From positions 310,001 to 374,000 of the IMG/VR virus record IMGVR_UViG_3300046660_000488: DNA of 64,000 nt; one strand, written 5' to 3'. This document shows, one piece after another, positions 10,565 to 20,347 of this stretch. Under the pieces are notes generated by a model. The model worked only from the letters and a program-made list of their open reading frames with translations. It was not told where the DNA came from and did no database searches. Each line of letters starts with the position of its first letter. The first letter of the stretch is position 1. The position numbers and the translations under genes are program-made.

Positions 10565-11127
10565 TGATCCGCCAACTCCTGTCTGGATTTTTCGAAACCA
10601 TGGCCGCCATCTTCCGCATCAACGACGGCGACAATGTCGCTGGTCGGAACCTCTTCATCAGCAGCAACCTCGTCATCATCGACGGCGTCGAATATGACAT
10701 GAAGGGCGTCCCTCCGGTGAAGCTGGAGATCGTCAACGGTTCGCTCGACACGCTAAGGGTCTACGGCAACGCCTATGTCGCTGAAGCCGTCACGGTCAAA
10801 ACCGTGGACGCCAGCGGCAACGTCGTCTGCGGACCTGTGACCGGCGACGTGGACGCCAGCGGCGACGTGACCGTGCACGGCAGTGTCGGCGGAAACGTCG
10901 ATTCGTCCAGCGACGTGACGGTCACCGGAAGCGTGGGCGGCTATGTGGACGCCTCGGGTGACGTTCGCTGCGGCGATGTCGGCCAGTACGTCGAATCTTC
11001 CGGCGACGTTGAGGCCGGAGACGTGAACGGCAACATCGACGCCTCGGGTGATGTGACCTGCGGCGGCATCAACGGCAACATCGACGCCTCGGGCGACGTG
11101 ACCGTGAACACCGGCCGTCCGGCATGA
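10564..11127 (+). CDS. beta-solenoid repeat protein (bactofilin-like)
   Basis: Seven 15-16 aa repeats of V/I-x-G-x-V/I-D-A-S-G-D-V. Confidence 0.7.
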   Translation: MIRQLLSGFFETMAAIFRINDGDNVAGRNLFISSNLVIIDGVEYDMKGVPPVKLEIVNGSLDTLRVYGNAYVAEAVTVKTVDASGNVVCGPVTGDVDASGDVTVHGSVGGNVDSSSDVTVTGSVGGYVDASGDVRCGDVGQYVESSGDVEAGDVNGNIDASGDVTCGGINGNIDASGDVTVNTGRPA

Positions 11128-12275
11128 GAATCCTATCCGGCGTCCAGCCCACCGGCAACCTGCACCTTGGCAACTATCTCGGCGCCATCAAGCAGTTCGC
11201 CAAGCTCCAGCAGCCCGGCAACAAGTGCTTCTACAGCGTGGTCGATCTACATGCGATCACCGCTGGCAAGCACGATCCGAACGTGCTGGCCCAGCACACC
11301 CGCGAGATCGCGGCGGCGTACATCGCCTCGGGTGTGGACCCCAACCGCTCGACGATCTTCGTCCAGTCACAGGTTCCGGAAATCGCCGAGCTTCACTGGC
11401 TGCTGTGCAACGTCGCGCGCATGGGCTGGCTGGAACGGATGACGCAGTATCGGGAGAAGACCAACAGCGTCCCTCCCGCTGACCTGCGTGGCATCCTCAG
11501 CCGCGTCGAGAAAGTGCTGAAGGGATCGGGGAGCTACAACCTCGAACCGCTGGAAGGCAATGCCGGGACCGTCTTCAACCACAATGACGTGCTGGCCATG
11601 TACGACATGCTGTCGCGCGTCACCTCCAACAAGGAGGGCGCGAGCGTCGGTCTGTTCACCTATCCGGTGCTGATGGCCGCCGACATCCTGTCGGTCGGCG
11701 CCACGCACGTTCCGGTCGGTCATGACCAACGCCAGCACCTGAACTTGGCTCGCGACATCATCGAGAAGCTGAACACCGACTTCCTGATGGTCCGTGACAT
11801 CCCCGAAGCGCTGCACGTCGCCGAAGGCGCGCGCGTCATGTCGCTGAAGGATGGCACGCGCAAGATGTCCAAGAGCGATGCCGACGACGCTGGCCGGATC
11901 AACATGACCGACAGCGACGAGGTGATCGCCAAGAAGGTCCGCAAGGCGACGGCCGACAGCCTGCCGTTCCCTGAGCACGACGTTGACCTGAAGCCGGAAG
12001 TGGCCAACCTGATCTCGATCTATGCTGGGGTCTCTGGGCTGGCGCGTGAGGCGATCTTCGCCGAATTCGCTGGCAAGGGCTGGGGCGTGTTCAAACCGGC
12101 CCTGACGGACGTCCTGATCACCAACATCGGTCCGATCCGCAACCAGATGGAACGGCTGCTCAAGGACGAAGGCTTCCTCGACTATCTGCTCGGCGAAGGC
12201 GCGATGAAAGCGCGGGAAGAAGCCGCGCGCACCTTGGGCATGACCAAGCACATGATGGGCTTCTACGGTGCTTGA
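11124..12275 (+). CDS. trpS: tryptophanyl-tRNA synthetase
   Basis: MRILSGVQPTGNLHLGNYLG, YPVLMAADIL, VPVGHDQ, KMSKS. Confidence 0.95.
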   Translation: MRILSGVQPTGNLHLGNYLGAIKQFAKLQQPGNKCFYSVVDLHAITAGKHDPNVLAQHTREIAAAYIASGVDPNRSTIFVQSQVPEIAELHWLLCNVARMGWLERMTQYREKTNSVPPADLRGILSRVEKVLKGSGSYNLEPLEGNAGTVFNHNDVLAMYDMLSRVTSNKEGASVGLFTYPVLMAADILSVGATHVPVGHDQRQHLNLARDIIEKLNTDFLMVRDIPEALHVAEGARVMSLKDGTRKMSKSDADDAGRINMTDSDEVIAKKVRKATADSLPFPEHDVDLKPEVANLISIYAGVSGLAREAIFAEFAGKGWGVFKPALTDVLITNIGPIRNQMERLLKDEGFLDYLLGEGAMKAREEAARTLGMTKHMMGFYGA

Positions 12276-12375
12276 TCTGGCCAACCAAATCGCCGGTGTC
12301 AGTGTTGCGGTTATCACCGCCTCACTGGCATCCGGCTTTGCTGGTATTCGTTACATCGCCCGCAACTGGCGTTAG
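12268..12375 (+). CDS. 35 aa single-TM peptide ([35 protein letters not shown])
   Basis: Translated by hand; GTG overlaps trpS end and TAG overlaps prs stop; hydrophobic core then basic tail. Confidence 0.4.
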
Positions 12376-13286
12376 ATACTGAGGCGAGACACCGACTCTT
12401 CGTGAGCCGCCCGGCGGATCGCTTCGCCGAACACGTCAGCCACCGACACCACCCGGATTTTCTTTGGCAGGTCCGCCTGCGGGATCGTGTCGGTGATAAC
12501 CACGGTCTTGATTGGCGAAGCGATGATGCGCTCGCGGGCTGGGCCAGACAGCACCCCGTGGGTGACGTAGGCGCTGACCGAAGCCGCACCCTTGGCGAGA
12601 AGAGCGTCGGCCGCGTGGCAGAGCGTTCCGGCCGTATCGACGATGTCGTCGTACAGGATGCAGTCGAAGCCTTCGACGTCGCCGATGATGTTCATCACCT
12701 CGCTCTCGTTGGCCTTCTCGCGGCGCTTGTCCACGATGGCCATGCCGATGCCGAGCTTTCCGGCCAGACCACGGGCGCGCACGACGCCGCCGACGTCAGG
12801 GGAGACGACGAGCGGGTTCTTGTAGCTGCGCTCGATGTCGCGGGCCAGCGTCGGCATGGCGGCGAGGTTGTCCACCGGGATGTTGAAGAAGCCTTCGATC
12901 TGTCCGGCGTGCAGGTCCATGGTCAGGATGCGCTGGGCGCCCGCCGTGGTCAGGATGTCGGCGACCAGCTTGGCCGAGATCGCCGTGCGACCGCCTTTGC
13001 GATCCTGCCGGGCGTAGCCGAAGTAGGGGATGACGGCAGTGATCCGCTTGGTGCTGGCGCGCTTGAGCGCGTCGATGCAGATCAGAAGCTCCATTAGGTT
13101 GTCGTTGGCTGGATTGCTGGTCGATTGCATGACGTAGACGTCCTGCCCGCGCATGTTCTCGAAGATGCGGACGGAGATTTCCTTGTCGGAGAACGTCTTG
13201 ACCGTGGACTCACACAGACGGATGCCGAGATATTCGGCAACGGTCTCGGCGAAAGCCGGATTGGAATTGCCAGCCAACAGCTTCAT
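12372..13286 (-). CDS. prs: ribose-phosphate pyrophosphokinase (PRPP synthetase)
   Basis: [48 protein letters not shown]. Confidence 0.95.
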
Positions 13287-13353: not shown

Positions 13354-13851
13354 TCAGGATTCGAAGAAGAAATGGTCCGCCAGTTCGAGGAATTTGTCGA
13401 GGGGCAGGAGCCAGTAATCCTTGTAGACGATGATCGGTTCCAACGGGACGCTACCTTTGTCCACGACGACCATTTCCGGCACGTTGTTGAACTTCATAAT
13501 GACGAGGACTTTCTTGTTCGCCTGCTTGGCGTCATGCTCGCACTGCTTGATCCACTCGTCGATGAACGTGCATTTCTGGTTCACCATGGACACGAAGGTC
13601 GGCGGCGTCTTGTAGTGCTTGCACTCGATGGAGAACTTGAAGCCGTCCGGGCAGATGATGTCGCCGAACGTCGCTTTGTCTAGGTCGTGAGTCTGCGTGC
13701 GGCGCGCGTTGCTTCCGCCGAAGAACGATCCTGAGTCTGCATTTCGGCGAAACGATTTCTCGATGCCTGTATGCTTCTCGAAGCGAGAAGAGAACGTGTT
13801 CGAGATTTTACGCTCGAAGGTGTTGCCTTTGTTTTTACCGTTAACGGGCAT
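13354..13851 (-). CDS. Holliday junction resolvase-like PD-(D/E)xK nuclease
   Basis: KGNTFER, GDIICP, IECKHY motifs. Confidence 0.75.
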   Translation of the reverse strand: MPVNGKNKGNTFERKISNTFSSRFEKHTGIEKSFRRNADSGSFFGGSNARRTQTHDLDKATFGDIICPDGFKFSIECKHYKTPPTFVSMVNQKCTFIDEWIKQCEHDAKQANKKVLVIMKFNNVPEMVVVDKGSVPLEPIIVYKDYWLLPLDKFLELADHFFFES

Positions 13852-13880
13852 GAGTTCCACTGCTGAATAAACGCTGCCCT

Positions 13881-13887
13881 TATTTAT
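13881..13887 (-). promoter_or_regulatory. late promoter motif ATAAATA
   Basis: Upstream of resolvase. Confidence 0.55.
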
Positions 13888-13934
13888 CGCGTCGAATTTT
13901 TGCCTCTGGTTATATGGGGTTCGAAGGAGCCCCC

Positions 13935-14249
13935 ATGACCGCTGTCGATCCCATTCAAAAGCAAATCCGCAAGGTCGCCAACCGCATGGAGCGGCAGAAT
14001 TATCTGGAATCGCGGCCTCTGTCGGACGCCAAGGTCCGGGCCGTGGTCAAGCACAATCTCTCCGTCGCCCATCCGGAAAAGACTGGCGAAGAGCTTGACA
14101 AAATGGTAAACGAAATCCTCAAATCGGTGATGCAGCCCTACAAGGGTCCTGCCGCCACCAAGCCGCCGCCCAAGCCGATCCTCGGCCGGGATTTGTACGA
14201 CGCCGAACGCCGCCAGACGGTGAAGAACATGCGGAGCCGCAGACGATGA
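13935..14249 (+). CDS. basic hypothetical protein
   Basis: AGGAG RBS before ATG. Confidence 0.6.
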   Translation: MTAVDPIQKQIRKVANRMERQNYLESRPLSDAKVRAVVKHNLSVAHPEKTGEELDKMVNEILKSVMQPYKGPAATKPPPKPILGRDLYDAERRQTVKNMRSRRR

Positions 14250-14431
14250 CCATCATGGCTGCTTTTGGCGTCATCCTCGCCGTTCTGTGTTCGGTCGGAA
14301 CCTACTTCGCCATCACCCGTCGTTTGCGGCGCGAGATTTCGGCCGAGTATTTCTGGGCCGCCATGGTCATCCTGTTCGTCGTCCAGATCATCGGCTGGCG
14401 CCTGTTCATCGTCAACGGCGGCCTCGGATGA
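14246..14431 (+). CDS. small two-TM membrane protein
   Basis: Two hydrophobic segments; ATGA overlaps. Confidence 0.6.
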   Translation: MTIMAAFGVILAVLCSVGTYFAITRRLRREISAEYFWAAMVILFVVQIIGWRLFIVNGGLG

Positions 14432-14799
14432 AGTATTATTTCGACGGTGGCTGCAAGCCGAACCCCGGTCAGATGGAAGTGGCGGTGGTCTCCGACGACG
14501 GAGCCGTCAAGCGCCATGGTTTCGTCGGCATGGGGACCAACAACGAGGCCGAATGGCTGGCGTTCATCTGGGCCTGCAATCTGGCGCTGGAGAATGGCCA
14601 CACCGACCTGACGATCAGCGGCGATTCAAAGCTGGTGATCTGCCAAGCCTTGGGCGAATGGCGGGTCAAGCATGAAGCGCTGCGGCCGTTCTACGAAACG
14701 TTCAAGGCGCTGCGGCCCAAGTTCACGAACTTGAAGCTCGTGCACGTTTTGCGCGGCAAGAACCCGGCTGGCCACTACATCGAAAGTCTGCACCGATGA
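14428..14799 (+). CDS. ribonuclease HI-like protein
   Basis: YFDGGCKPNPG, GTNNEAEW, GDSKLVICQ..GEWRVK catalytic D/E/D pattern. Confidence 0.88.
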   Translation: MKYYFDGGCKPNPGQMEVAVVSDDGAVKRHGFVGMGTNNEAEWLAFIWACNLALENGHTDLTISGDSKLVICQALGEWRVKHEALRPFYETFKALRPKFTNLKLVHVLRGKNPAGHYIESLHR

Positions 14800-14981
14800 C
14801 CGCATCCCAGATGATCGACGTCGCCTTCGTCGTGTGCCTTGGTGGCCTGCTGCTGACCTACGTCCTCGACGCGGTGGCGTTCATCTTCATCCACGTGTCG
14901 ATCTGGTGGATCAGCCGGACCGATCCAGAGCGAGCGGAAGGCCATCGGCGCTACTATCGCTACATGCGAGATCGCCGATGA
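14796..14981 (+). CDS. small membrane protein
   Basis: Hydrophobic N-terminal half; ATGA overlaps. Confidence 0.55.
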   Translation: MTASQMIDVAFVVCLGGLLLTYVLDAVAFIFIHVSIWWISRTDPERAEGHRRYYRYMRDRR

Positions 14982-15169
14982 ACACGGTGTTCGTTCTGAA
15001 GACCCCGGACGTTGCCAGCACCCTCGCATTCTTCGAGGAACTTGGGCTGGTGTTCCAGACGGAAATCCACGGGACCGGCCCGGTGCACTATGCGTGCGAG
15101 CAGAACGGCCGCGTGTTCGAAATCTACCCGTCCAAGGACGGAGGGACGACTACCAAATTTTTTGACTAA
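14978..15169 (+). CDS. glyoxalase/VOC-like half-domain protein (63 aa)
   Basis: FVLKTPDV..TLAFFEELGL.F, HGTGPVHYA, FEIYP. Confidence 0.6.
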   Translation: MNTVFVLKTPDVASTLAFFEELGLVFQTEIHGTGPVHYACEQNGRVFEIYPSKDGGTTTKFFD

Positions 15170-15183
15170 TTCTGGAAGCGATT

Positions 15184-15852
15184 ATGATGGACAAATTTTG
15201 CCATGCGTGCGGCGTCAAGCACGTGGACATTGCCTACCCCAAGACCTGCATGGCTTGCAGCCGGATCACCTATTCCAACCCCAAGCCGGTCGCCGTCGCG
15301 CTAGTCCCGGTCTACGACCGCAAGAACAAGCGCACGGGCATCCTGATCGGTGAACGCGGCATCGAGCCCCAGAAAGGCACGTACGGCCTGCCGGGCGGCT
15401 ACGTGGACGACAAGGACACGAGCTTTGCTGGCGCCGCCGCGCGCGAGGTCTTCGAAGAGACCGGTCTGCGCGTCGATCCCAACGAGCTTGTCCCGTTCCA
15501 TTCCTTCTCGGACGGTCGCAACATCCTCGTCTTCCTGACGATGAGCGAGACGATCTCGTTCGACACGGTGGTGAAGAATTTCGAGCCGTGCGATGAGTGC
15601 CCGGCCGTTCGCGTCGCATGGGAACCGGAAGACCTGTCGTTCTCGTCGCACACCATCGCCATGGAAAAGTGGTTTGACCGCCGGGCGGCCATCGAACGCA
15701 TTCGCGGTGACATCGGTGAAGGTCTTGAGATCACAGGCCTGCAAACGCAGGCCGTCTACGAGGCCATGGAGATCGGCATCAAATCGTTCGTGGACATCGC
15801 GTCTGAACTGCGCGCTCAGGAACGCGAAGACCTCAAATCCACCGCAGTTTGA
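15184..15852 (+). CDS. Nudix hydrolase with N-terminal zinc ribbon
   Basis: CHAC...CMAC, NPKPVA, Nudix box PGGYVD...AAREVFEETG. Confidence 0.9.
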   Translation: MMDKFCHACGVKHVDIAYPKTCMACSRITYSNPKPVAVALVPVYDRKNKRTGILIGERGIEPQKGTYGLPGGYVDDKDTSFAGAAAREVFEETGLRVDPNELVPFHSFSDGRNILVFLTMSETISFDTVVKNFEPCDECPAVRVAWEPEDLSFSSHTIAMEKWFDRRAAIERIRGDIGEGLEITGLQTQAVYEAMEIGIKSFVDIASELRAQEREDLKSTAV

Positions 15853-16180
15853 AGTACGTCGCCTCGGTGAGGTCTTCGAAATAGAATCCGTCGTGCTTCA
15901 TGTGCCATCGCTTGTGAAGCGTCTCGACGATCCAGACTACCATGTCGGCGGTTTCGGCTGATTTCCAGCCCTTCTCTTCGATGTGGTAGTCAAAGGGTAG
16001 CAGGCAGTATCGGTCAAGTTGCTTGATGCTATGCTTACCCCGCAGCCATTCAGGCAAGTCGGGATAGTTCTTCACACCGATACACTCCAGTGTGGTATTG
16101 ACTTTGGATACTGGGCGACCGAAGAATTCTTCAAGGTCGCCCAGCATCTTCTGTTCATATCGTGACTTCGATAGCATCAT
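15833..16180 (-). CDS. hypothetical protein (paralog family)
   Basis: C-terminus FYFEDLTEATYFKLRWI; start at MMLSKSR overlapping upstream stop. Confidence 0.6.
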   Translation of the reverse strand: MMLSKSRYEQKMLGDLEEFFGRPVSKVNTTLECIGVKNYPDLPEWLRGKHSIKQLDRYCLLPFDYHIEEKGWKSAETADMVVWIVETLHKRWHMKHDGFYFEDLTEATYFKLRWI

Positions 16181-16416
16181 AGGATCGGCAGGTTCGTCTT
16201 CTCGACAAATTTGATTCTGTCTTCTATGTATCGAATGTAACGCTTGCGCTCTTCGTGACTTAGAGACCACGCTTCATCACGAGTGAGACCGCCACGCATG
16301 TGCCAACTCAGCGTAATGACGTGGTCAATCAGTTCCCTCTGTTGAGCGCGAAAGCTCCTGATCAACCGCTGAATATCGTTCGGGTCTGTTAGGCTCAGGA
16401 GCCTTGCTCGAAAAAA
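16177..16416 (-). CDS. gp51-like baseplate/tail assembly chaperone; may be translated as a frameshift extension of the upstream gene
   Basis: LSWHMRGGLTRDEAWSLSHEER...LPIL; no ATG between the upstream stop and the motif. Confidence 0.6.
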   Translation of the reverse strand, partial: FFRARLLSLTDPNDIQRLIRSFRAQQRELIDHVITLSWHMRGGLTRDEAWSLSHEERKRYIRYIEDRIKFVEKTNLPIL

Positions 16417-17522
16417 GTTGACGGGTTGAACTCGATCTCGGTTTCCCATTCGTGCTGGCAAGCCGTGCACGCCACGTGGATAGCCTTGTCGATGCCCTTG
16501 GTGTTGATCTCGCGCAGCTTGGCTTCGAGCTTGGAGGTCATTGACCGGCCGACGTTCTGGATGAAGCGGCCAATGGCCCCACGATCCGTCACGGTGGCTT
16601 CCGGGGTAACCAGCGCCACGATAGCCCCGATCATCGCGTTGGATTGCAGCGACGACAGGCGACGGAACGCGCGGTTACGAGCAGCAGAAATCTGAACCTC
16701 GTCGCCGGATGCTTCCGCGATCTGTAGGGATCGACCTTCCTCGTAGCTGGTCAGCGTGATGGTCGTCACCGTCTCCAGCGTATAGGGCTTGACATAGGCG
16801 GTAAGGCCCGGAGCCAGTTCGACCGGGTTCTGCTGATCTACATAGGTCATCGAGCCCATGACGGACGGCAGGTGGCACTCGAACGTGTGCTCGGCGCCGC
16901 AGGACGGGCAAGCAACCTCGATCTCCATGTTGTCGCCATACGATGCGGCGCGGATGGCCAGCAGCAGGACGTCAAGGTCCGGGCTCGACACGGCGCGCGG
17001 GTTTCGGATCGCCGGGACGCACGACTTCAGAAGTTCCTCGATAGCGTATCCGCTCATCAGGGCGTCGGGGTTCTTCATCAGAAGCTCGTCCTGAGCCCGC
17101 ATCGGGAAGATCGGCACTTCGTGGTTCAGGGCCGGGTTGTAGTCCCGTTGATCGAAGAACGCGCCACGGGTCGGGAGCATCACCGTCAGGCCGGGCACGC
17201 GATAGAAGCGCGCCAGCGGGTCGATGGCCGCCTGTTGAGCCTGATCCAGCGCGGCCAGTGCTTCAGCCGGAGACGTGAAGGGCTGCTCGCCGAACGCTGG
17301 GAACGACGGCGGAGCGCCCATGCCCGGAGGCGGAGCGAACGCTTGGGGCGCGGGCTGCGTGAACTCGGTCCGATGCTGCGGTTGCGGCTGTTGGACCTGT
17401 TGCGGACGCGGCGGCGGGATGTGAGGCGCGGCCGGGCGCTGCATGGCTTGGAACGGATGGGGCGGCGGAAGATCACCGTCACCGTAGTTCTCGTTGAATT
17501 CGTCGTCGGGGAATTGCGTCAT
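16395..17522 (-). CDS. T4 gp26-like baseplate hub assembly protein with Pro/Gln-rich N-terminus
   Basis: LARFYRVP...LPTRG...PIFPMRAQDELLMKNPDALMSG...SCVP; CPSC and CTAC pairs. Confidence 0.75.
   Translation of the reverse strand: MTQFPDDEFNENYGDGDLPPPHPFQAMQRPAAPHIPPPRPQQVQQPQPQHRTEFTQPAPQAFAPPPGMGAPPSFPAFGEQPFTSPAEALAALDQAQQAAIDPLARFYRVPGLTVMLPTRGAFFDQRDYNPALNHEVPIFPMRAQDELLMKNPDALMSGYAIEELLKSCVPAIRNPRAVSSPDLDVLLLAIRAASYGDNMEIEVACPSCGAEHTFECHLPSVMGSMTYVDQQNPVELAPGLTAYVKPYTLETVTTITLTSYEEGRSLQIAEASGDEVQISAARNRAFRRLSSLQSNAMIGAIVALVTPEATVTDRGAIGRFIQNVGRSMTSKLEAKLREINTKGIDKAIHVACTACQHEWETEIEFNPSTFFEQGS
16410..16416 (-). promoter_or_regulatory. candidate -1 frameshift heptamer T TTT TTC
   Basis: In frame in gp26-like gene; AGGCTC-CT-GAGCCT hairpin starts 5 nt downstream. 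Confidence 0.55.
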
Positions 17523-17629: not shown

Positions 17630-20347
17630 ATGAGCGATATTACAGCACGCCAGATGGATGACCTCCTGTCCCAGTTGAAATCAGCAACTGGTGCATTTGG
17701 TAAAGCCGCCGACAAACTCAACGACACTGGGTCGTCGAAGAATGCTGCATCGAAGGCTGCGAAGGAGACGCTTGATCTTGAGGATAAGAAGCAAGGCTTC
17801 ATTTCCAAGAACATTCAGAGCCTGAAGCAGAGCACCCACGCACAAGACACCTTCGCCGAACGCATCGGGAAATCCTCGGGAATCCTCGGGGCTGCTTTGG
17901 GCGAGTTCGTCAATTGGTCCAAGGAAACGGTCTCCACCTACCGCGAAATGGTTCAGGTCGGCCAGACGTTCAACGGCTCGATGCTGGAAATGAGCAAGGC
18001 TGCGGCCGAGAGCGGCATGCCGCTGAAGGAATTCGCGGAAGCCATCAAATCCAACAGCCACGTCGTCGCCCAGCTTGGCGCGAGCGGTAAGTCGGGTAGC
18101 TTCGGCGACCTTCAGAAGAAAATTCGCATCGCCACTGAGAGCGCTGGTCTGTTCGGCCTGTCCGTCCAAGGCCTGACCGCGTTCCAAGGCGACTATCTCG
18201 AAATCCAGCGTCTGTCGAACGATCTCGATACGCGCGCCTCGTCGCGTTACCAGAAGACGATCATCGACTTGGCCAGTTCGGCTGGCGTGATGGCTCAGAT
18301 CACGGGTGAAGCACAGGATCAAATCCGCGAGAAATCAAAGGCTGCTCTAAGCGATTCTCTGGTCACCGCGACGCTGGCCCAAAACGCGCAGCGCGGCATG
18401 GGCGCCTACAACGACGCCCTCCAGAAAGCCGTTGTCGAACTGGCCGCGCAGCCGGGCATCGCCGGTACGATGCTGTCCAAGGGCATGGCCGACACCTTCT
18501 CCCACTTCGGCATGGCCTACATGACCGAAGCCGGTCAGAAATTCATTGAAGCCGGTGTCTCGGGAGCGTCGGACGTTCTGGGTGAAGCGGCGCGCCGCAT
18601 TTCGGCCGGTGAGGACGCCACGACCGTCAACATGCAGATGGTCAGCCAACTGAAGACGATGCTGTCCGATCCGCAGACGCGCGAATCTCTGAAGCTGCAA
18701 GCGGTCGCTGGCAACAAAGCCGCCGAAGAAATCCTCCAGCTTTCTGCTGACCTGAAAACCTATACCAAGGCCGACATCGCCAAGGCGAAGAACGATCAGA
18801 AGAACAAGGACATGATCACGCAGATCAGCCTTGCTGGTAAGAGCGTGTGGGATCGTCTGACTGGCGACTTCCTGACCGGGTTCCTGCAACCGATCACCGA
18901 AATCTTCAACGACCCCAAGGCCGTCGCCGAGTGGAAGACGACGTTCGAGGAGCTTGCCAAGCAGATTGAACCTCTGGGTAAGCAATTCGGTCAATTCGTC
19001 AAGGAAGTCTTCACGCCGGGGATGGTAAAGGACTTGGTGAATGGATTGGTCGCCACCGTCAAAACGGTCAAGGTCATCGGTGATCTTGGCTTCGGCCTGA
19101 CCAAGATCGTCTTTGGCTACACCAATTTCATCAGCAAGATCACCAAGCCGCTCGACGGTCTGCATAAGGGGCTCGGTGGTCTGGCTACGGGCATTGCTCT
19201 GGTCGCCACATGGTTCGCTGGCAAGAAACTGATCGGTGCGATCATGAAGGGCATGGGCCTTGGTGGTGGCAAGACCACGATCAAGGCGACCGTCGCCAAC
19301 ATCTTCGCGAACAAGATCACCGGCGGGCGGCGCGGTCGCGGCGGGCGCGGATCGGGCGCGGCCGGAGCCATGGGCGACGCTGCTGAGGAAGTGCTGGAAG
19401 ACACCGTCGAGGGCGGCGCTGGCAAGATCGGCCGTAAGCGTCGTGGCGTCGGCGGTCTGCTCAAGCGCGCCATGAAGGGTCGTGGAACGAAGGGTCTGAA
19501 GGCGTTCGCAAAGCGCGTTCCGGGCGCTGCATGGGATTTCGCCAAGAAACACCCCAAGGACTTGATCAAGGGAGCCGCGAAGGGCGCGGTTGTCGGCGCC
19601 GTCGTGGGCATCGCCACGGACATGGCCACCGAAGCGGTCTTGGATAAGCTGGGCGTCAAGGGCGACGACAAGAAAGCCGTGTCGGACATCACGAGCGGTG
19701 TGACCGGTGGAGCGTCCATGGGCGCGACCATCGGCTCGATCATTCCCGGCGTCGGAACGCTGGCTGGCGGCATCATCGGTGGCGCGGTCGGCGGCCTGAT
19801 CGGCGTGGCCAAGAACTTCAAGACCGTGAAAAAGTGGGTCGGTGATTTCGCCAAGGGCGCTGGCGACATGTTCAAGAACATGTGGGACTGGATCACCAAG
19901 GCCGAGTGGATGAAGCCGATCCTGACCATGCTGAAATTCAGCCCGGTTGGTCTGGCTTTCATGGGCACGAAGGCGCTCGCCGGAGCCCTCACCAAGCCGA
20001 AGGACTTGCCGGGCGGCACGCTGGGCGATCCTGATGGCGCGTCAGCCCCGCAAGCCAAGGCCGGTATCTTCGACCGCCTCGGCGATTTCTTCAAGCCGAA
20101 GGCTTCGGGCGTCAAGACCCCGCCGCCTCCGTCAGGCACGGGAACATTGGGCGGCGCTGATCGTCTTCGCAACAACCAGCAGTCCGGAAATGGTGGTCAG
20201 AACGTCTCGAACGCTGACCTTCTGAAGGAAATGAAGGCTGGACGAGAGGCGACTGAACGTCAAACGGCCATCATGTCACGCCTGCTGCAACAGTCGAACC
20301 AGTTGTCACAGAAGGGTATTTCGGCTTCGGAAATGAAGGGAATGTAA
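17630..20347 (+). CDS. tail tape measure protein
   Basis: 905 aa, Ala/Gly/Lys-rich helical protein with Gly-rich hydrophobic segments; next to chaperone and portal genes. Confidence 0.75.
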   Translation: MSDITARQMDDLLSQLKSATGAFGKAADKLNDTGSSKNAASKAAKETLDLEDKKQGFISKNIQSLKQSTHAQDTFAERIGKSSGILGAALGEFVNWSKETVSTYREMVQVGQTFNGSMLEMSKAAAESGMPLKEFAEAIKSNSHVVAQLGASGKSGSFGDLQKKIRIATESAGLFGLSVQGLTAFQGDYLEIQRLSNDLDTRASSRYQKTIIDLASSAGVMAQITGEAQDQIREKSKAALSDSLVTATLAQNAQRGMGAYNDALQKAVVELAAQPGIAGTMLSKGMADTFSHFGMAYMTEAGQKFIEAGVSGASDVLGEAARRISAGEDATTVNMQMVSQLKTMLSDPQTRESLKLQAVAGNKAAEEILQLSADLKTYTKADIAKAKNDQKNKDMITQISLAGKSVWDRLTGDFLTGFLQPITEIFNDPKAVAEWKTTFEELAKQIEPLGKQFGQFVKEVFTPGMVKDLVNGLVATVKTVKVIGDLGFGLTKIVFGYTNFISKITKPLDGLHKGLGGLATGIALVATWFAGKKLIGAIMKGMGLGGGKTTIKATVANIFANKITGGRRGRGGRGSGAAGAMGDAAEEVLEDTVEGGAGKIGRKRRGVGGLLKRAMKGRGTKGLKAFAKRVPGAAWDFAKKHPKDLIKGAAKGAVVGAVVGIATDMATEAVLDKLGVKGDDKKAVSDITSGVTGGASMGATIGSIIPGVGTLAGGIIGGAVGGLIGVAKNFKTVKKWVGDFAKGAGDMFKNMWDWITKAEWMKPILTMLKFSPVGLAFMGTKALAGALTKPKDLPGGTLGDPDGASAPQAKAGIFDRLGDFFKPKASGVKTPPPPSGTGTLGGADRLRNNQQSGNGGQNVSNADLLKEMKAGREATERQTAIMSRLLQQSNQLSQKGISASEMKGM

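What the first reader, a model, noticed from the sequence alone, without database searches (positions are those of the whole stretch)
16177..17522. Candidate programmed -1 frameshift fusing gp26-like and gp51-like chaperones beside the tape measure gene
Seen on the minus strand: the gp26-like gene ends ...ACT TTT TTC GAG CAA GGC TCC TGA. The heptamer T TTT TTC (16416-16410) is in frame, a hairpin AGGCTC-CT-GAGCCT (16404-16391) starts 5 nt later, and the -1 frame (TTT TTT CGA GCA AGG CTC CTG...) runs without a stop into the gp51-like ORF. That ORF has no ATG between the upstream stop and its HMRGG motif. Known: long-tailed phages make tail chaperones G and GT by such a shift next to the tape measure gene, whereas T4 gp26 and gp51 are separate genes. 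Inference: the T4-type hub chaperones here are a G/GT system.
Basis: partly seen in the sequence, partly recalled or inferred. Interest (0 to 1): 0.8.

Follow-up and report, generated by a model that had tools for sequence, protein, structure and literature searches.

The report
Frameshifted gp26/gp51 tail-hub chaperone gene
This giant-phage gene very probably makes a short and a long version of a baseplate-hub assembly protein because some ribosomes slip back one base at T TTT TTC. The signal is real and strikingly conserved, but the principle was already published for T4-like phages in 2022.

Summary
On the minus strand a PF12322 (T4 gp26/gp51-type) hub gene (17522-16395) carries T TTT TTC (16416-16410) in the slip register, four codons before its stop. 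The -1 frame stays open for 77 more codons, to 16177.

The heptamer is the only TTT codon in the gene; the other 16 Phe codons are TTC. An in-register slippery heptamer sits at this spot in all 89 jumbo/mega-phage hub loci and all 48 distinct cyanophage-type contexts examined. Most relatives have no usable start codon for the -1 ORF. Stable stem-loops follow the heptamer far more often than in control windows (p = 1e-21).

The -1 tail is homologous to the C-terminal domain of T4 gp51. gp51's first 200 residues belong to the same family as gp26. So slipping yields a gp26-like short form and a gp51-like long form. Natural in-frame hub+tail fusions exist, one beside a separate short paralog.

The tape-measure identity of the neighbour is only a candidate, and the small hairpin is not the main structure.

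Vladimirov, Gautam & Davidson (Virology 2022), seen only through its title and two citing papers, apparently established the concept. This is therefore a new, unannotated member of a known kind.

The parts
16395..17522 (-). Zero-frame gene for the short product (375 aa). It is a gp26/gp51-type baseplate-hub assembly protein with two CxxC pairs. Residues 1-100 are a Pro/Gln-rich extension that most relatives lack.
   Evidence: ORF list. Pfam PF12322 2.9e-14 and phrog_150 'baseplate hub' 1.4e-18. AlphaFold model of residues 101-375 has mean pLDDT 94.4. It is the only hub-profile hit in the window.
16410..16416 (-). Slippery heptamer T TTT TTC in the X XXY YYZ register. Phe370 would sit in the P site and Phe371 in the A site.
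   Evidence: Sequence. It holds the only TTT codon of the gene. The heptamer is conserved in every homologous locus examined.
16177..16409 (-). -1-frame extension. Its first codon, CGA, spans 16410-16408, so it shares one base with the heptamer. It runs 77 codons plus the TGA at 16179-16177 and encodes the gp51-C-like helical tail (RARLLSLTDP...WHMRGGLTRDEAWSLSHEER...).
   Evidence: ORF 16177-16470. Tail alignments A2, A4 and A7. hhalign against the gp51 C-terminal profile gives 88%, E 3e-6. The tail profile finds 732 proteins at E<=1e-3 in the representative library. In a natural in-frame fusion the same region models as helices with pLDDT 74-93.
16344..16409 (-). Predicted stimulatory stem-loop. 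An 11-bp stem pairs 16405-16395 (which includes the zero-frame UGA) with 16361-16351. A 4-bp outer helix pairs 16409-16406 with 16347-16344.
   Evidence: strand folding gives -24.8 kcal/mol, z -2.54. Relatives have stems starting 5-7 nt after the heptamer. Family-wide enrichment against control windows has p = 1e-21.
16391..16404 (-). It competes with the long stem for the same 5' arm.
   Evidence: -6.0 kcal/mol, z -0.94, 24 of 200 shuffles fold as well.
17630..20347 (+). Divergently transcribed 905-aa protein with Gly-rich hydrophobic segments. It is a candidate tape measure and a virion structural protein.
   Evidence: phrog_14121 1.6e-9. The syntenic CBB and vB_Ec-M-J proteins belong to the same PHROG. 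One GenBank record labels it 'tail length tape measure protein'. There is local BLASTP similarity, E 8e-7. There is no similarity to T4 gp29 and no tblastn match in the phage collection.
15833..16180 (-). 115-aa ORF of unknown function. Its ATG overlaps the tail's TGA (ATGA), so it is probably read by ribosomes finishing the -1 frame or by re-initiation.
   Evidence: Sequence, ORF list, no Pfam hit.

Best explanation
One gene yields two proteins.

- Ribosomes that read straight through terminate at 16395 and make a 375-aa gp26-like hub-assembly protein.
- A fraction slips back one base while Phe-tRNAs sit on T TTT TTC, paused by a stem-loop that starts a few bases downstream.
- Those ribosomes continue in the -1 frame for 77 codons and make a 448-aa protein. 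Its added helical tail corresponds to the C-terminal domain of T4 gp51.

The two forms are the counterparts of T4's separate hub-assembly chaperones gp26 and gp51. By analogy with lambda G/GT they would act together in building the hub and tail around the tape-measure protein.

Shown here: the recoding signals, their conservation, the homologies, and the existence of natural in-frame long forms.

Inferred: that slipping actually occurs in this phage, its efficiency, and the chaperone mechanism.
For: 1. The heptamer is in register, 4 codons before the stop. It holds the only TTT among 17 Phe codons in a gene where 12.8% of codons end in T.

2. Conservation at 25-46% protein identity.
   - 84 of 84 loci have a slippery heptamer.
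   - So do 5 of 5 more distant jumbo phages: CBB, Vibrio 2.275.O, XacN1, SCTP-2 and Asteriusvirus.
   - So do 3 T4-like phages (OLIVR5, S-WAM1, LPCS28) and 48 of 48 distinct cyanophage-type contexts.
   - The preceding codon is NNT in 75 of 75 contexts across 7 amino acids. The other FF dipeptides in hub genes are slippery in 0 of 11 cases.
   - Where a T is lost, A AAT TTT takes over in register.

3. Independent initiation is not generally possible.
   - Only 7 of 72 distinct loci have a start codon upstream in the -1 frame.
   - Many have their first start 30-50 codons into the conserved tail. PA5oct has none.

4. Downstream structure.
   - Window: z -2.54.
   - Family: mean z -1.82 against -0.18 in control windows of the same genes, p = 1e-21.
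   - Stems begin 5-7 nt after the heptamer in relatives.

5. The long form is a real protein. About 20 of the top 150 hits to the tail profile are 319-351-aa in-frame hub+tail proteins with a non-slippery junction. One of them models at pLDDT 90.

6. Both forms are wanted.
   - That fusion sits next to a separate short paralog.
   - T4 keeps gp26 (short) and gp51 (long). Both are PF12322.
   - gp51 is collinear with hub+tail.

7. PRF-type genomes carry a single copy.

8. [quoted passage not shown]
Against: - There is no expression data for this or any relative here: no peptide, ribosome profiling or reporter assay.
- In this window the -1 frame is open 86 codons upstream, with GTG, TTG and ATG at codons -18, -15 and -11. 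Internal initiation cannot be excluded for this phage on its own sequence. None of these starts has an obvious Shine-Dalgarno sequence, by my reading.
- RNAalifold finds no single consensus structure across the family, so the stimulators are lineage-specific.
- The window's long stem starts 4 nt after the heptamer, or 0 nt counting the outer helix. That is shorter than in the relatives folded.
- The host, and the efficiency of U UUU UUC on its ribosomes, are unknown.
- The chaperone role rests on T4 genetics and the lambda analogy.
- The fold has no solved relative. It shows no similarity to canonical tail assembly chaperones.
- The neighbour's tape-measure identity is unproven.
Confidence: 0.88

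Rival explanations
1. The tail ORF is a separate small gene, translated from its own start. Candidates are ATG near 16449, GTG 16470, or the TTG at tail codon 17. The heptamer would then be incidental.
For: Start codons exist upstream in the -1 frame in this window and in its closest relative L008. Phosso, Atu_ph07 and many cyanophages have an ATG at or near the junction. Annotators have called small genes there.
Against: Such starts are absent in 65 of 72 distinct relatives. PA5oct has none at all. Conservation of the tail peptide begins at the slip site itself, FFRxRLL. The heptamer is invariant despite amino-acid turnover before it. Natural in-frame fusions show the tail works attached to the hub domain. 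I see no Shine-Dalgarno sequence before the candidate starts.
Confidence: 0.05
2. The same fusion is made by transcriptional slippage: RNA polymerase adds one extra U in the T6 run, rather than the ribosome slipping.
For: The site is a homopolymer run. One metagenomic contig carries T7 there, which puts the tail in frame.
Against: Six T is short for efficient polymerase slippage; known cases use runs of about nine or more (established knowledge; review PMC5009743). The codon register of the run is strictly conserved. Five loci shorten the run to T5 yet keep an in-register A AAT TTT. A downstream stem-loop at frameshift spacing is enriched. The T7 contig is a long-read assembly with other split genes, so it is probably a homopolymer error.
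Confidence: 0.04
3. Assembly or sequencing error, or a pseudogene: the true gene is a single in-frame hub+tail ORF.
For: Homopolymer runs are error-prone, and in-frame versions exist in nature.
Against: The same T6 and -1 arrangement is found in well over 100 independent contigs and in finished genomes of isolated phages. True in-frame versions have a different, non-slippery junction with a single Phe.
Confidence: 0.02

Closest known systems
[quoted passage not shown]
   Same: As cited by others, that paper reports poly-T -1 slippery sequences in the 'TAC-N' genes of T4-like phages. It also reports that some T4-like phages carry one short gene plus one long fused gene instead. That is the pattern found here: PRF in cyanophage, OLIVR5 and LPCS28 types, and two genes in T4.
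   Different: I could not read the paper, so its exact scope is unknown to me. The window is a 578-kb megaphage contig. In its jumbo relatives (Phosso, Atu_ph07, PA5oct, CBB, XacN1, SCTP-2, Asteriusvirus) the shift is not annotated. Their tail is longer (70-83 aa, WYMRGG motif) than the ~50-65-aa gp51-type tail.
Bacteriophage T4 gp26 and gp51 (hub assembly chaperones)
   Same: The hub domain is the same Pfam family: window 2.9e-14, gp26 8.8e-64, gp51 3.9e-52. gp51's C-terminal ~50 residues align with the -1 tails from the Phe of the slip site onward. T4 lists both as hub assembly chaperones (PMC3004832).
   Different: T4 uses two divergently placed genes. gp26 ends ...GAG TTC TTT..., which is not slippery, and is followed by gene 25. 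gp51 is one continuous ORF.
Lambda gpG/gpGT tail assembly chaperones (Levin 1993; Xu, Hendrix & Duda 2004, 2013, 2014)
   Same: Two products share an N-terminal body. The long one is made by a -1 shift a few codons before the stop of the first ORF. Both are assembly factors, and the locus lies next to a tape-measure candidate.
   Different: No sequence or fold similarity was detected. The first ORF is 275-375 aa with a zinc-ribbon-like pair of CxxC motifs, not the small helical gpG (about 140 aa, from memory). The gene is divergent from the tape-measure candidate, not between the tube and tape-measure genes. The heptamer is T TTT TTC, not G GGA AAG.
Cyanophage 'short gp51'
   Same: Sullivan et al. 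2010 noted that cyanophage and marine vibriophage gp51 is only ~20% the length of T4 gp51, with similarity confined to the C-terminus (PMC3037559). Those ORFs are the -1 tails described here.
   Different: That paper does not mention a frameshift (0 occurrences of 'frameshift'). The jumbo-phage tail is a more divergent, longer version.

Membership tests
PF12322 T4_baseplate (gp26/gp51 hub assembly proteins) | Significant match to the family profile over most of its length | tested here: met
   Window residues 141-371 match profile positions 23-218 of 219: E 2.9e-14, 53.7 bits against a cutoff of 24.5. phrog_150 gives 1.4e-18.
gp51 C-terminal domain (listed as PF28602 in the precomputed annotations) | Homology of the -1 tail to the last ~50 residues of T4 gp51 | tested here: met
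   hhalign of A4 against A11 gives 88% probability, E 3e-6, over 60 columns. A4 against full-length gp51 (A8) gives E 1.2e-4, aligning C-terminus to C-terminus. The S-WAM1 tail against T4 gp51 by BLASTP gives 9e-6. Direct BLASTP of the window tail fails, E 6.7. PF28602 itself is not in the Pfam copy I could scan.
Programmed -1 ribosomal frameshift cassette | X XXY YYZ heptamer in the zero-frame register near the end of ORF1 | tested here: met
   T TTT TTC at 16416-16410. It is invariant across relatives.
Programmed -1 ribosomal frameshift cassette | Stimulatory RNA structure a few nucleotides downstream | tested here: met
   Window z -2.54. Family against controls, p = 1e-21. Spacing is 5-7 nt in relatives. 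There is no shared consensus structure.
Programmed -1 ribosomal frameshift cassette | The -1 ORF lacks its own initiation site | tested here: inconclusive
   Met in 65 of 72 distinct relatives. In this window, GTG, TTG and ATG lie 18, 15 and 11 codons upstream of the slip site.
Programmed -1 ribosomal frameshift cassette | Trans-frame protein detected | not testable with these tools
   No proteomic or ribosome-profiling data are available here. The natural in-frame fusions show only that such a protein is viable.
Lambda-type G/GT tail assembly chaperones | Sequence or fold homology to gpG-like chaperones | tested here: not met
   There is no Pfam or PHROG chaperone hit. PDB profile searches find nothing at E<0.01. 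The best Foldseek E-values are 0.12 and 0.84, with TM below 0.25 for full-length matches.
Lambda-type G/GT tail assembly chaperones | Gene pair located between the tail-tube gene and the tape-measure gene, on the same strand | tested here: not met
   The gene is divergent from the 905-aa tape-measure candidate. Its other neighbours are a 115-aa ORF and a NUDIX gene. In Atu_ph07 the divergent neighbours are small ORFs.
Lambda-type G/GT tail assembly chaperones | Short and long forms share the N-terminal body; the long form is made by a -1 shift near the 3' end | tested here: met
Lambda-type G/GT tail assembly chaperones | Both forms needed for tail assembly, absent from virions, and binding the tape measure and the tube | not testable with these tools
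   There are indirect hints only. The T4 review lists gp26 and gp51 as hub assembly chaperones and says gp51 is required for assembly but absent from the final particle. In the PA5oct record the neighbour carries an 'ESI-MS/MS' note and the hub gene does not.

The most novel reading that the evidence does not exclude
The -1 frameshift is the ancestral way of making the short and long hub chaperones across the whole T4 superfamily, from cyanophages to >500-kb megaphages. It has been replaced by a pair of duplicated genes at least twice independently: once in the T-even line (gp26 + gp51), and once inside the jumbo clade (tandem short gene + in-frame fusion, L091). That would be a natural experiment showing that recoding and gene duplication are interchangeable solutions. 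In the jumbo clade, the conserved divergent neighbour (phrog_14121) would be the long-sought tape measure.
Probability: 0.45. Interest if true: 0.55.

Novelty: new member of a known kind. Interest (0 to 1): 0.4.

Why it matters
- It corrects the annotation of a core structural gene. In dozens of isolated jumbo phages and T4-like phages the tail ORF is currently missing, truncated at an internal Met, or labelled as a tiny 'gp51'.
- It explains the old observation that cyanophage gp51 is only a fifth of the T4 length.
- It gives a compact, testable recoding signal: an invariant heptamer plus a lineage-specific stem-loop.
- The two-gene and one-gene versions offer a way to ask why tail and hub assembly needs a fixed ratio of short to long chaperone.
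- The general idea is already in the literature, so the gain is breadth and detail rather than a new principle.

Tried and rejected
- A DNA-level search of the region against phage genomes found nothing.
- Pfam, PHROGs and direct BLASTP gave nothing for the tail alone. Only profiles linked it to gp51.
- The first alignment that included T4 gp26 was too divergent to seed a locus search.
- RNAalifold on 78 aligned junctions predicted no common structure. I therefore compared folding z-scores with control windows instead.
- PDB sequence-profile and Foldseek searches of two confident models found no relative.
- The 905-aa neighbour showed no significant similarity to T4 gp29 and had no tblastn match in the phage collection. 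Atu_ph07's annotated 'tape measure' is 205 aa and distant, so it was no help.
- A locus search with T4 gp26 returned only near-identical T-evens, so it was useless as a negative control. I used a tblastn spread instead.
- The other two TTTTTTC sites in the window are not in register with a long ORF.
- The Vladimirov 2022 paper is not held.
Full report
**What is in the window.** On the minus strand, an ORF from 17522 to 16395 (375 aa) ends ...ACT TTT TTC GAG CAA GGC TCC TGA. The heptamer T TTT TTC lies at 16416-16410 in the X XXY YYZ register. The -1 frame reads TTT TTT CGA GCA AGG... and runs without a stop to TGA at 16179-16177. The predicted trans-frame product is 371 + 77 = 448 aa, with junction ...NPSTFFRAR....

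The ORF is a member of PF12322, 'T4 bacteriophage base plate protein' (E 2.9e-14), and of phrog_150, 'baseplate hub'. The -1 ORF has no Pfam or PHROG hit on its own.

The window is part of a 578-kb viral contig. Around the gene lie:
- a divergent 905-aa protein (17630-20347), followed by a T4-type portal gene;
- on the other side, a 115-aa ORF that overlaps the tail's stop codon (ATGA), and a NUDIX gene.

**Is the heptamer more than chance?**
- Within this gene the other 16 Phe codons are all TTC, and only 12.8% of codons end in T. ACT TTT TTC is strongly against the gene's own codon usage.
- TTTTTTC is rare in the window: 3 sites against 7.6 expected.
- The other two sites are not in register with a long ORF.

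**Comparative evidence.**

*Named relatives.* tblastn found homologs of both the hub and the tail in Sinorhizobium phage Phosso, Agrobacterium phage Atu_ph07, the Pseudomonas PA5oct group and Xanthomonas Xoo-sp13. The tail is always in the -1 frame directly after the hub gene.

*The wider jumbo clade.* A scan of IMG/VR gave 80 loci at 30-46% identity. Together with the four genomes above, 84 of 84 loci have an in-register slippery heptamer 1-10 codons before the hub stop:
- T TTT TTC in 78;
- A AAT TTT alone in 5, where one T of the run is lost;
- T TTT TTT in 1.

Each is followed by a conserved 70-83-aa -1 ORF. Five more distant jumbo phages show the same arrangement: CBB, Vibrio 2.275.O, XacN1, Salicola SCTP-2 and an Asteriusvirus.

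*Nucleotide-level selection.* The codon before the two Phe codons encodes seven different amino acids (N, S, T, D, H, A, Y). It ends in T in 75 of 75 distinct contexts, against a background of 35% T at third positions. Eleven other FF dipeptides in these genes are never slippery.

*No start codon for the tail.* Only 7 of 72 distinct loci have any ATG, GTG or TTG upstream of the slip site in the -1 frame. In many the first start lies 30-50 codons into the conserved tail. PA5oct has none. Independent initiation cannot therefore be the general way this ORF is expressed. In this particular window, upstream starts do exist, at codons -18, -15 and -11.

**RNA structure.** The 77 nt from the heptamer fold into an 11-bp stem, 16405-16395 with 16361-16351, plus a 4-bp outer helix (-24.8 kcal/mol, z -2.54).

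Relatives have different sequences but similar arrangements. Stems begin 5-7 nt after the heptamer in L008, L007, PA5oct, S-WAM1 (z -5.4) and OLIVR5.

Across 78 distinct junctions, the 60 nt after the heptamer have mean z -1.82 and mean energy -14.6 kcal/mol. Control windows in the same genes have mean z -0.18 and -7.8 kcal/mol (Mann-Whitney p = 1e-21). In the junction set 46% have z < -2, against 6% of controls. No single consensus structure exists, so the stimulators appear lineage-specific.

**What the tail is.**

*gp26 and gp51 are paralogs.* T4 gp26 (208 aa) matches PF12322 over residues 1-206, and T4 gp51 (249 aa) matches it over residues 1-201 (8.8e-64 and 3.9e-52). gp51 has about 50 extra C-terminal residues.

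*The short 'gp51' of T4-like phages.* Agrobacterium phage OLIVR5, Synechococcus phage S-WAM1 and Cronobacter phage LPCS28 have T TTT TTC one or two codons before the hub stop. The -1 tails that follow align residue by residue with the gp51 C-terminus, starting at the Phe of the slip site. S-WAM1 against T4 gp51 by BLASTP gives E 9e-6. All 48 distinct cyanophage-type contexts recovered from IMG/VR have the same heptamer.

*The jumbo tail.* The jumbo-phage tail profile matches the gp51-C profile at 88% probability, E 3e-6.

*An old puzzle.* Sullivan et al. 2010 noted that cyanophage gp51 is only ~20% as long as T4 gp51, and did not mention a frameshift. This result accounts for that observation.

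**The long form is a real protein, and both forms are kept.**

*In-frame fusions.* A profile search with the tail against 1.84 billion representative proteins gave 732 hits at E<=1e-3. Most are ORF fragments of 55-100 aa. About 20 of the top 150 are proteins of 319-351 aa with PF12322 followed in frame by the tail. Their junction has a single Phe and a non-slippery sequence, for example AGT TTC AGA.

*Collinearity and structure.* These fusions align collinearly with the T4 gp51 family over their full length (E 1.1e-4). One models confidently (pLDDT 90), with the tail as a set of helices following the hub domain.

*A separate short paralog.* On contig L091 the fusion gene is immediately preceded by a separate 294-aa PF12322 gene without a tail.

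*Copy number.* Every phage-collection genome with a hub match listed shows a single matching place, and the window has one hub ORF and one tail ORF.

*A tree of the hub domain.*
- T4 gp26 and gp51 fall in one supported clade with the PRF-type LPCS28 (97/92). That clade is nested among PRF-type cyanophage and OLIVR5 genes.
- The in-frame fusions fall with their short paralog and a PRF-type gene in another supported clade (98/96), inside the jumbo group.
- This suggests two independent changes from one frameshifted gene to two genes.
- Caveats: the root is a midpoint root, and the branches of the short paralog and of one gp26 are long.

**Mechanism and function.** The best-supported reading is a classical tandem-slippage -1 frameshift that gives a fixed ratio of short to long protein. 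This is analogous to lambda G/GT.

The chaperone role is inferred. The T4 tail review lists gp26 and gp51 as hub assembly chaperones and notes that gp51 is absent from particles (PMC3004832). In the PA5oct record the neighbouring 799-aa protein is flagged as detected in virions, and the hub gene is not.

The proteins are not homologs of gpG. There are no family hits, and two high-confidence models have no Foldseek match in the PDB.

The claim 'beside the tape measure gene' is only partly secured.
- For: the 905-aa neighbour belongs to the same PHROG as the syntenic virion proteins of CBB and an Asteriusvirus. One record calls it a tape measure.
- For, roughly: PA5oct's 799 residues and 136-nm tail (abstract of PMC3936114) give a length per residue similar to T4 gp29. 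The T4 tail length used here is from my own knowledge, so this is a rough check.
- Against: there is no sequence link to gp29, and the adjacency is not universal.

**Rivals.** I rate three alternatives low, for the reasons given in the rival entries: independent initiation, transcriptional slippage on the T6 run, and homopolymer sequencing error. The T7 variant in contig L093 comes from a long-read assembly with other split genes.

**Novelty.** Full-text searches found no paper describing this shift in jumbo phages. [quoted passage not shown]
- One says that some T4-like phages carry one short gene and one long fused gene instead of frameshifting.
- The other says that poly-T slippery sequences are known in the TAC-N genes of T4-like phages.

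I could not read the paper itself. On this evidence the concept is already published.

What this window adds:
- a new, unannotated member in a megaphage;
- a family-wide demonstration in the Rak2, PA5oct and Atu_ph07-type jumbo phages;
- the downstream-structure statistics;
- a possible second, independent origin of the two-gene solution.

I therefore score interest as moderate (0.4) and classify the finding as a new member of a known kind.

Noticed in passing
window 17222-17522 (-): The first ~100 residues of the hub protein are a Pro/Gln-rich low-complexity extension. Nearly all homologs lack it; among the 80 loci only L009 matches the query from residue 2. Its function is unknown.
   Followed up: no
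L001-L004, L086-L090, L101-L103 (GenBank records): The tail ORF is annotated inconsistently. It is missing in PA5oct, S-WAM1 and LPCS28. It is truncated at internal starts in Atu_ph07, CBB, XacN1, SCTP-2 and Xoo-sp13. In OLIVR5 it is a 46-aa 'baseplate hub assembly catalyst'. No record marks ribosomal slippage.
   Followed up: yes
L091:411-1295: The separate short paralog next to an in-frame fusion still ends ...A AAT TTT TTC..., but its -1 frame stops after three codons. It also lacks the CxxC pairs. The heptamer may be a relic, or simply AT-rich codon usage.
   Followed up: partly
L093:2443-2449: One metagenomic long-read contig has T7 instead of T6 at the slip site, which fuses hub and tail in frame (protein P0195). 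Neighbouring genes look split, so a homopolymer error is likely.
   Followed up: partly
window 16177-16394 vs 16395-17522: G+C drops from 63.6% in the hub ORF to 50% in the tail region. The window average is 58.5%.
   Followed up: no
window 11124-13286: ORFs that read like a tryptophanyl-tRNA synthetase (11124-12275, +) and a ribose-phosphate pyrophosphokinase (12372-13286, -) lie near the structural genes. I judged this from the translations and did not scan them against families.
   Followed up: no
window 13354-15852: A PDDEXK endonuclease (13354-13860, -), an RNase H-like gene (14287-14799, +) and a NUDIX hydrolase (15184-15852, +) follow the hub locus. Phosso has RNase HI and a Holliday-junction resolvase downstream of its hub gene, and PA5oct has a RusA-like resolvase.
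   Followed up: no
L185:10510-11127 (Atu_ph07 gp701): The protein annotated 'tail length tape measure protein' in Atu_ph07 is only 205 aa, implausibly short for a jumbo myovirus tail. The tape measure of this group seems unsettled.
   Followed up: partly
L005:2803-3090 (T4 gene 26'): T4 is annotated with an internal in-frame product 26', sharing the stop codon of gene 26. That would be another way of making two related hub proteins from one gene.
   Followed up: no
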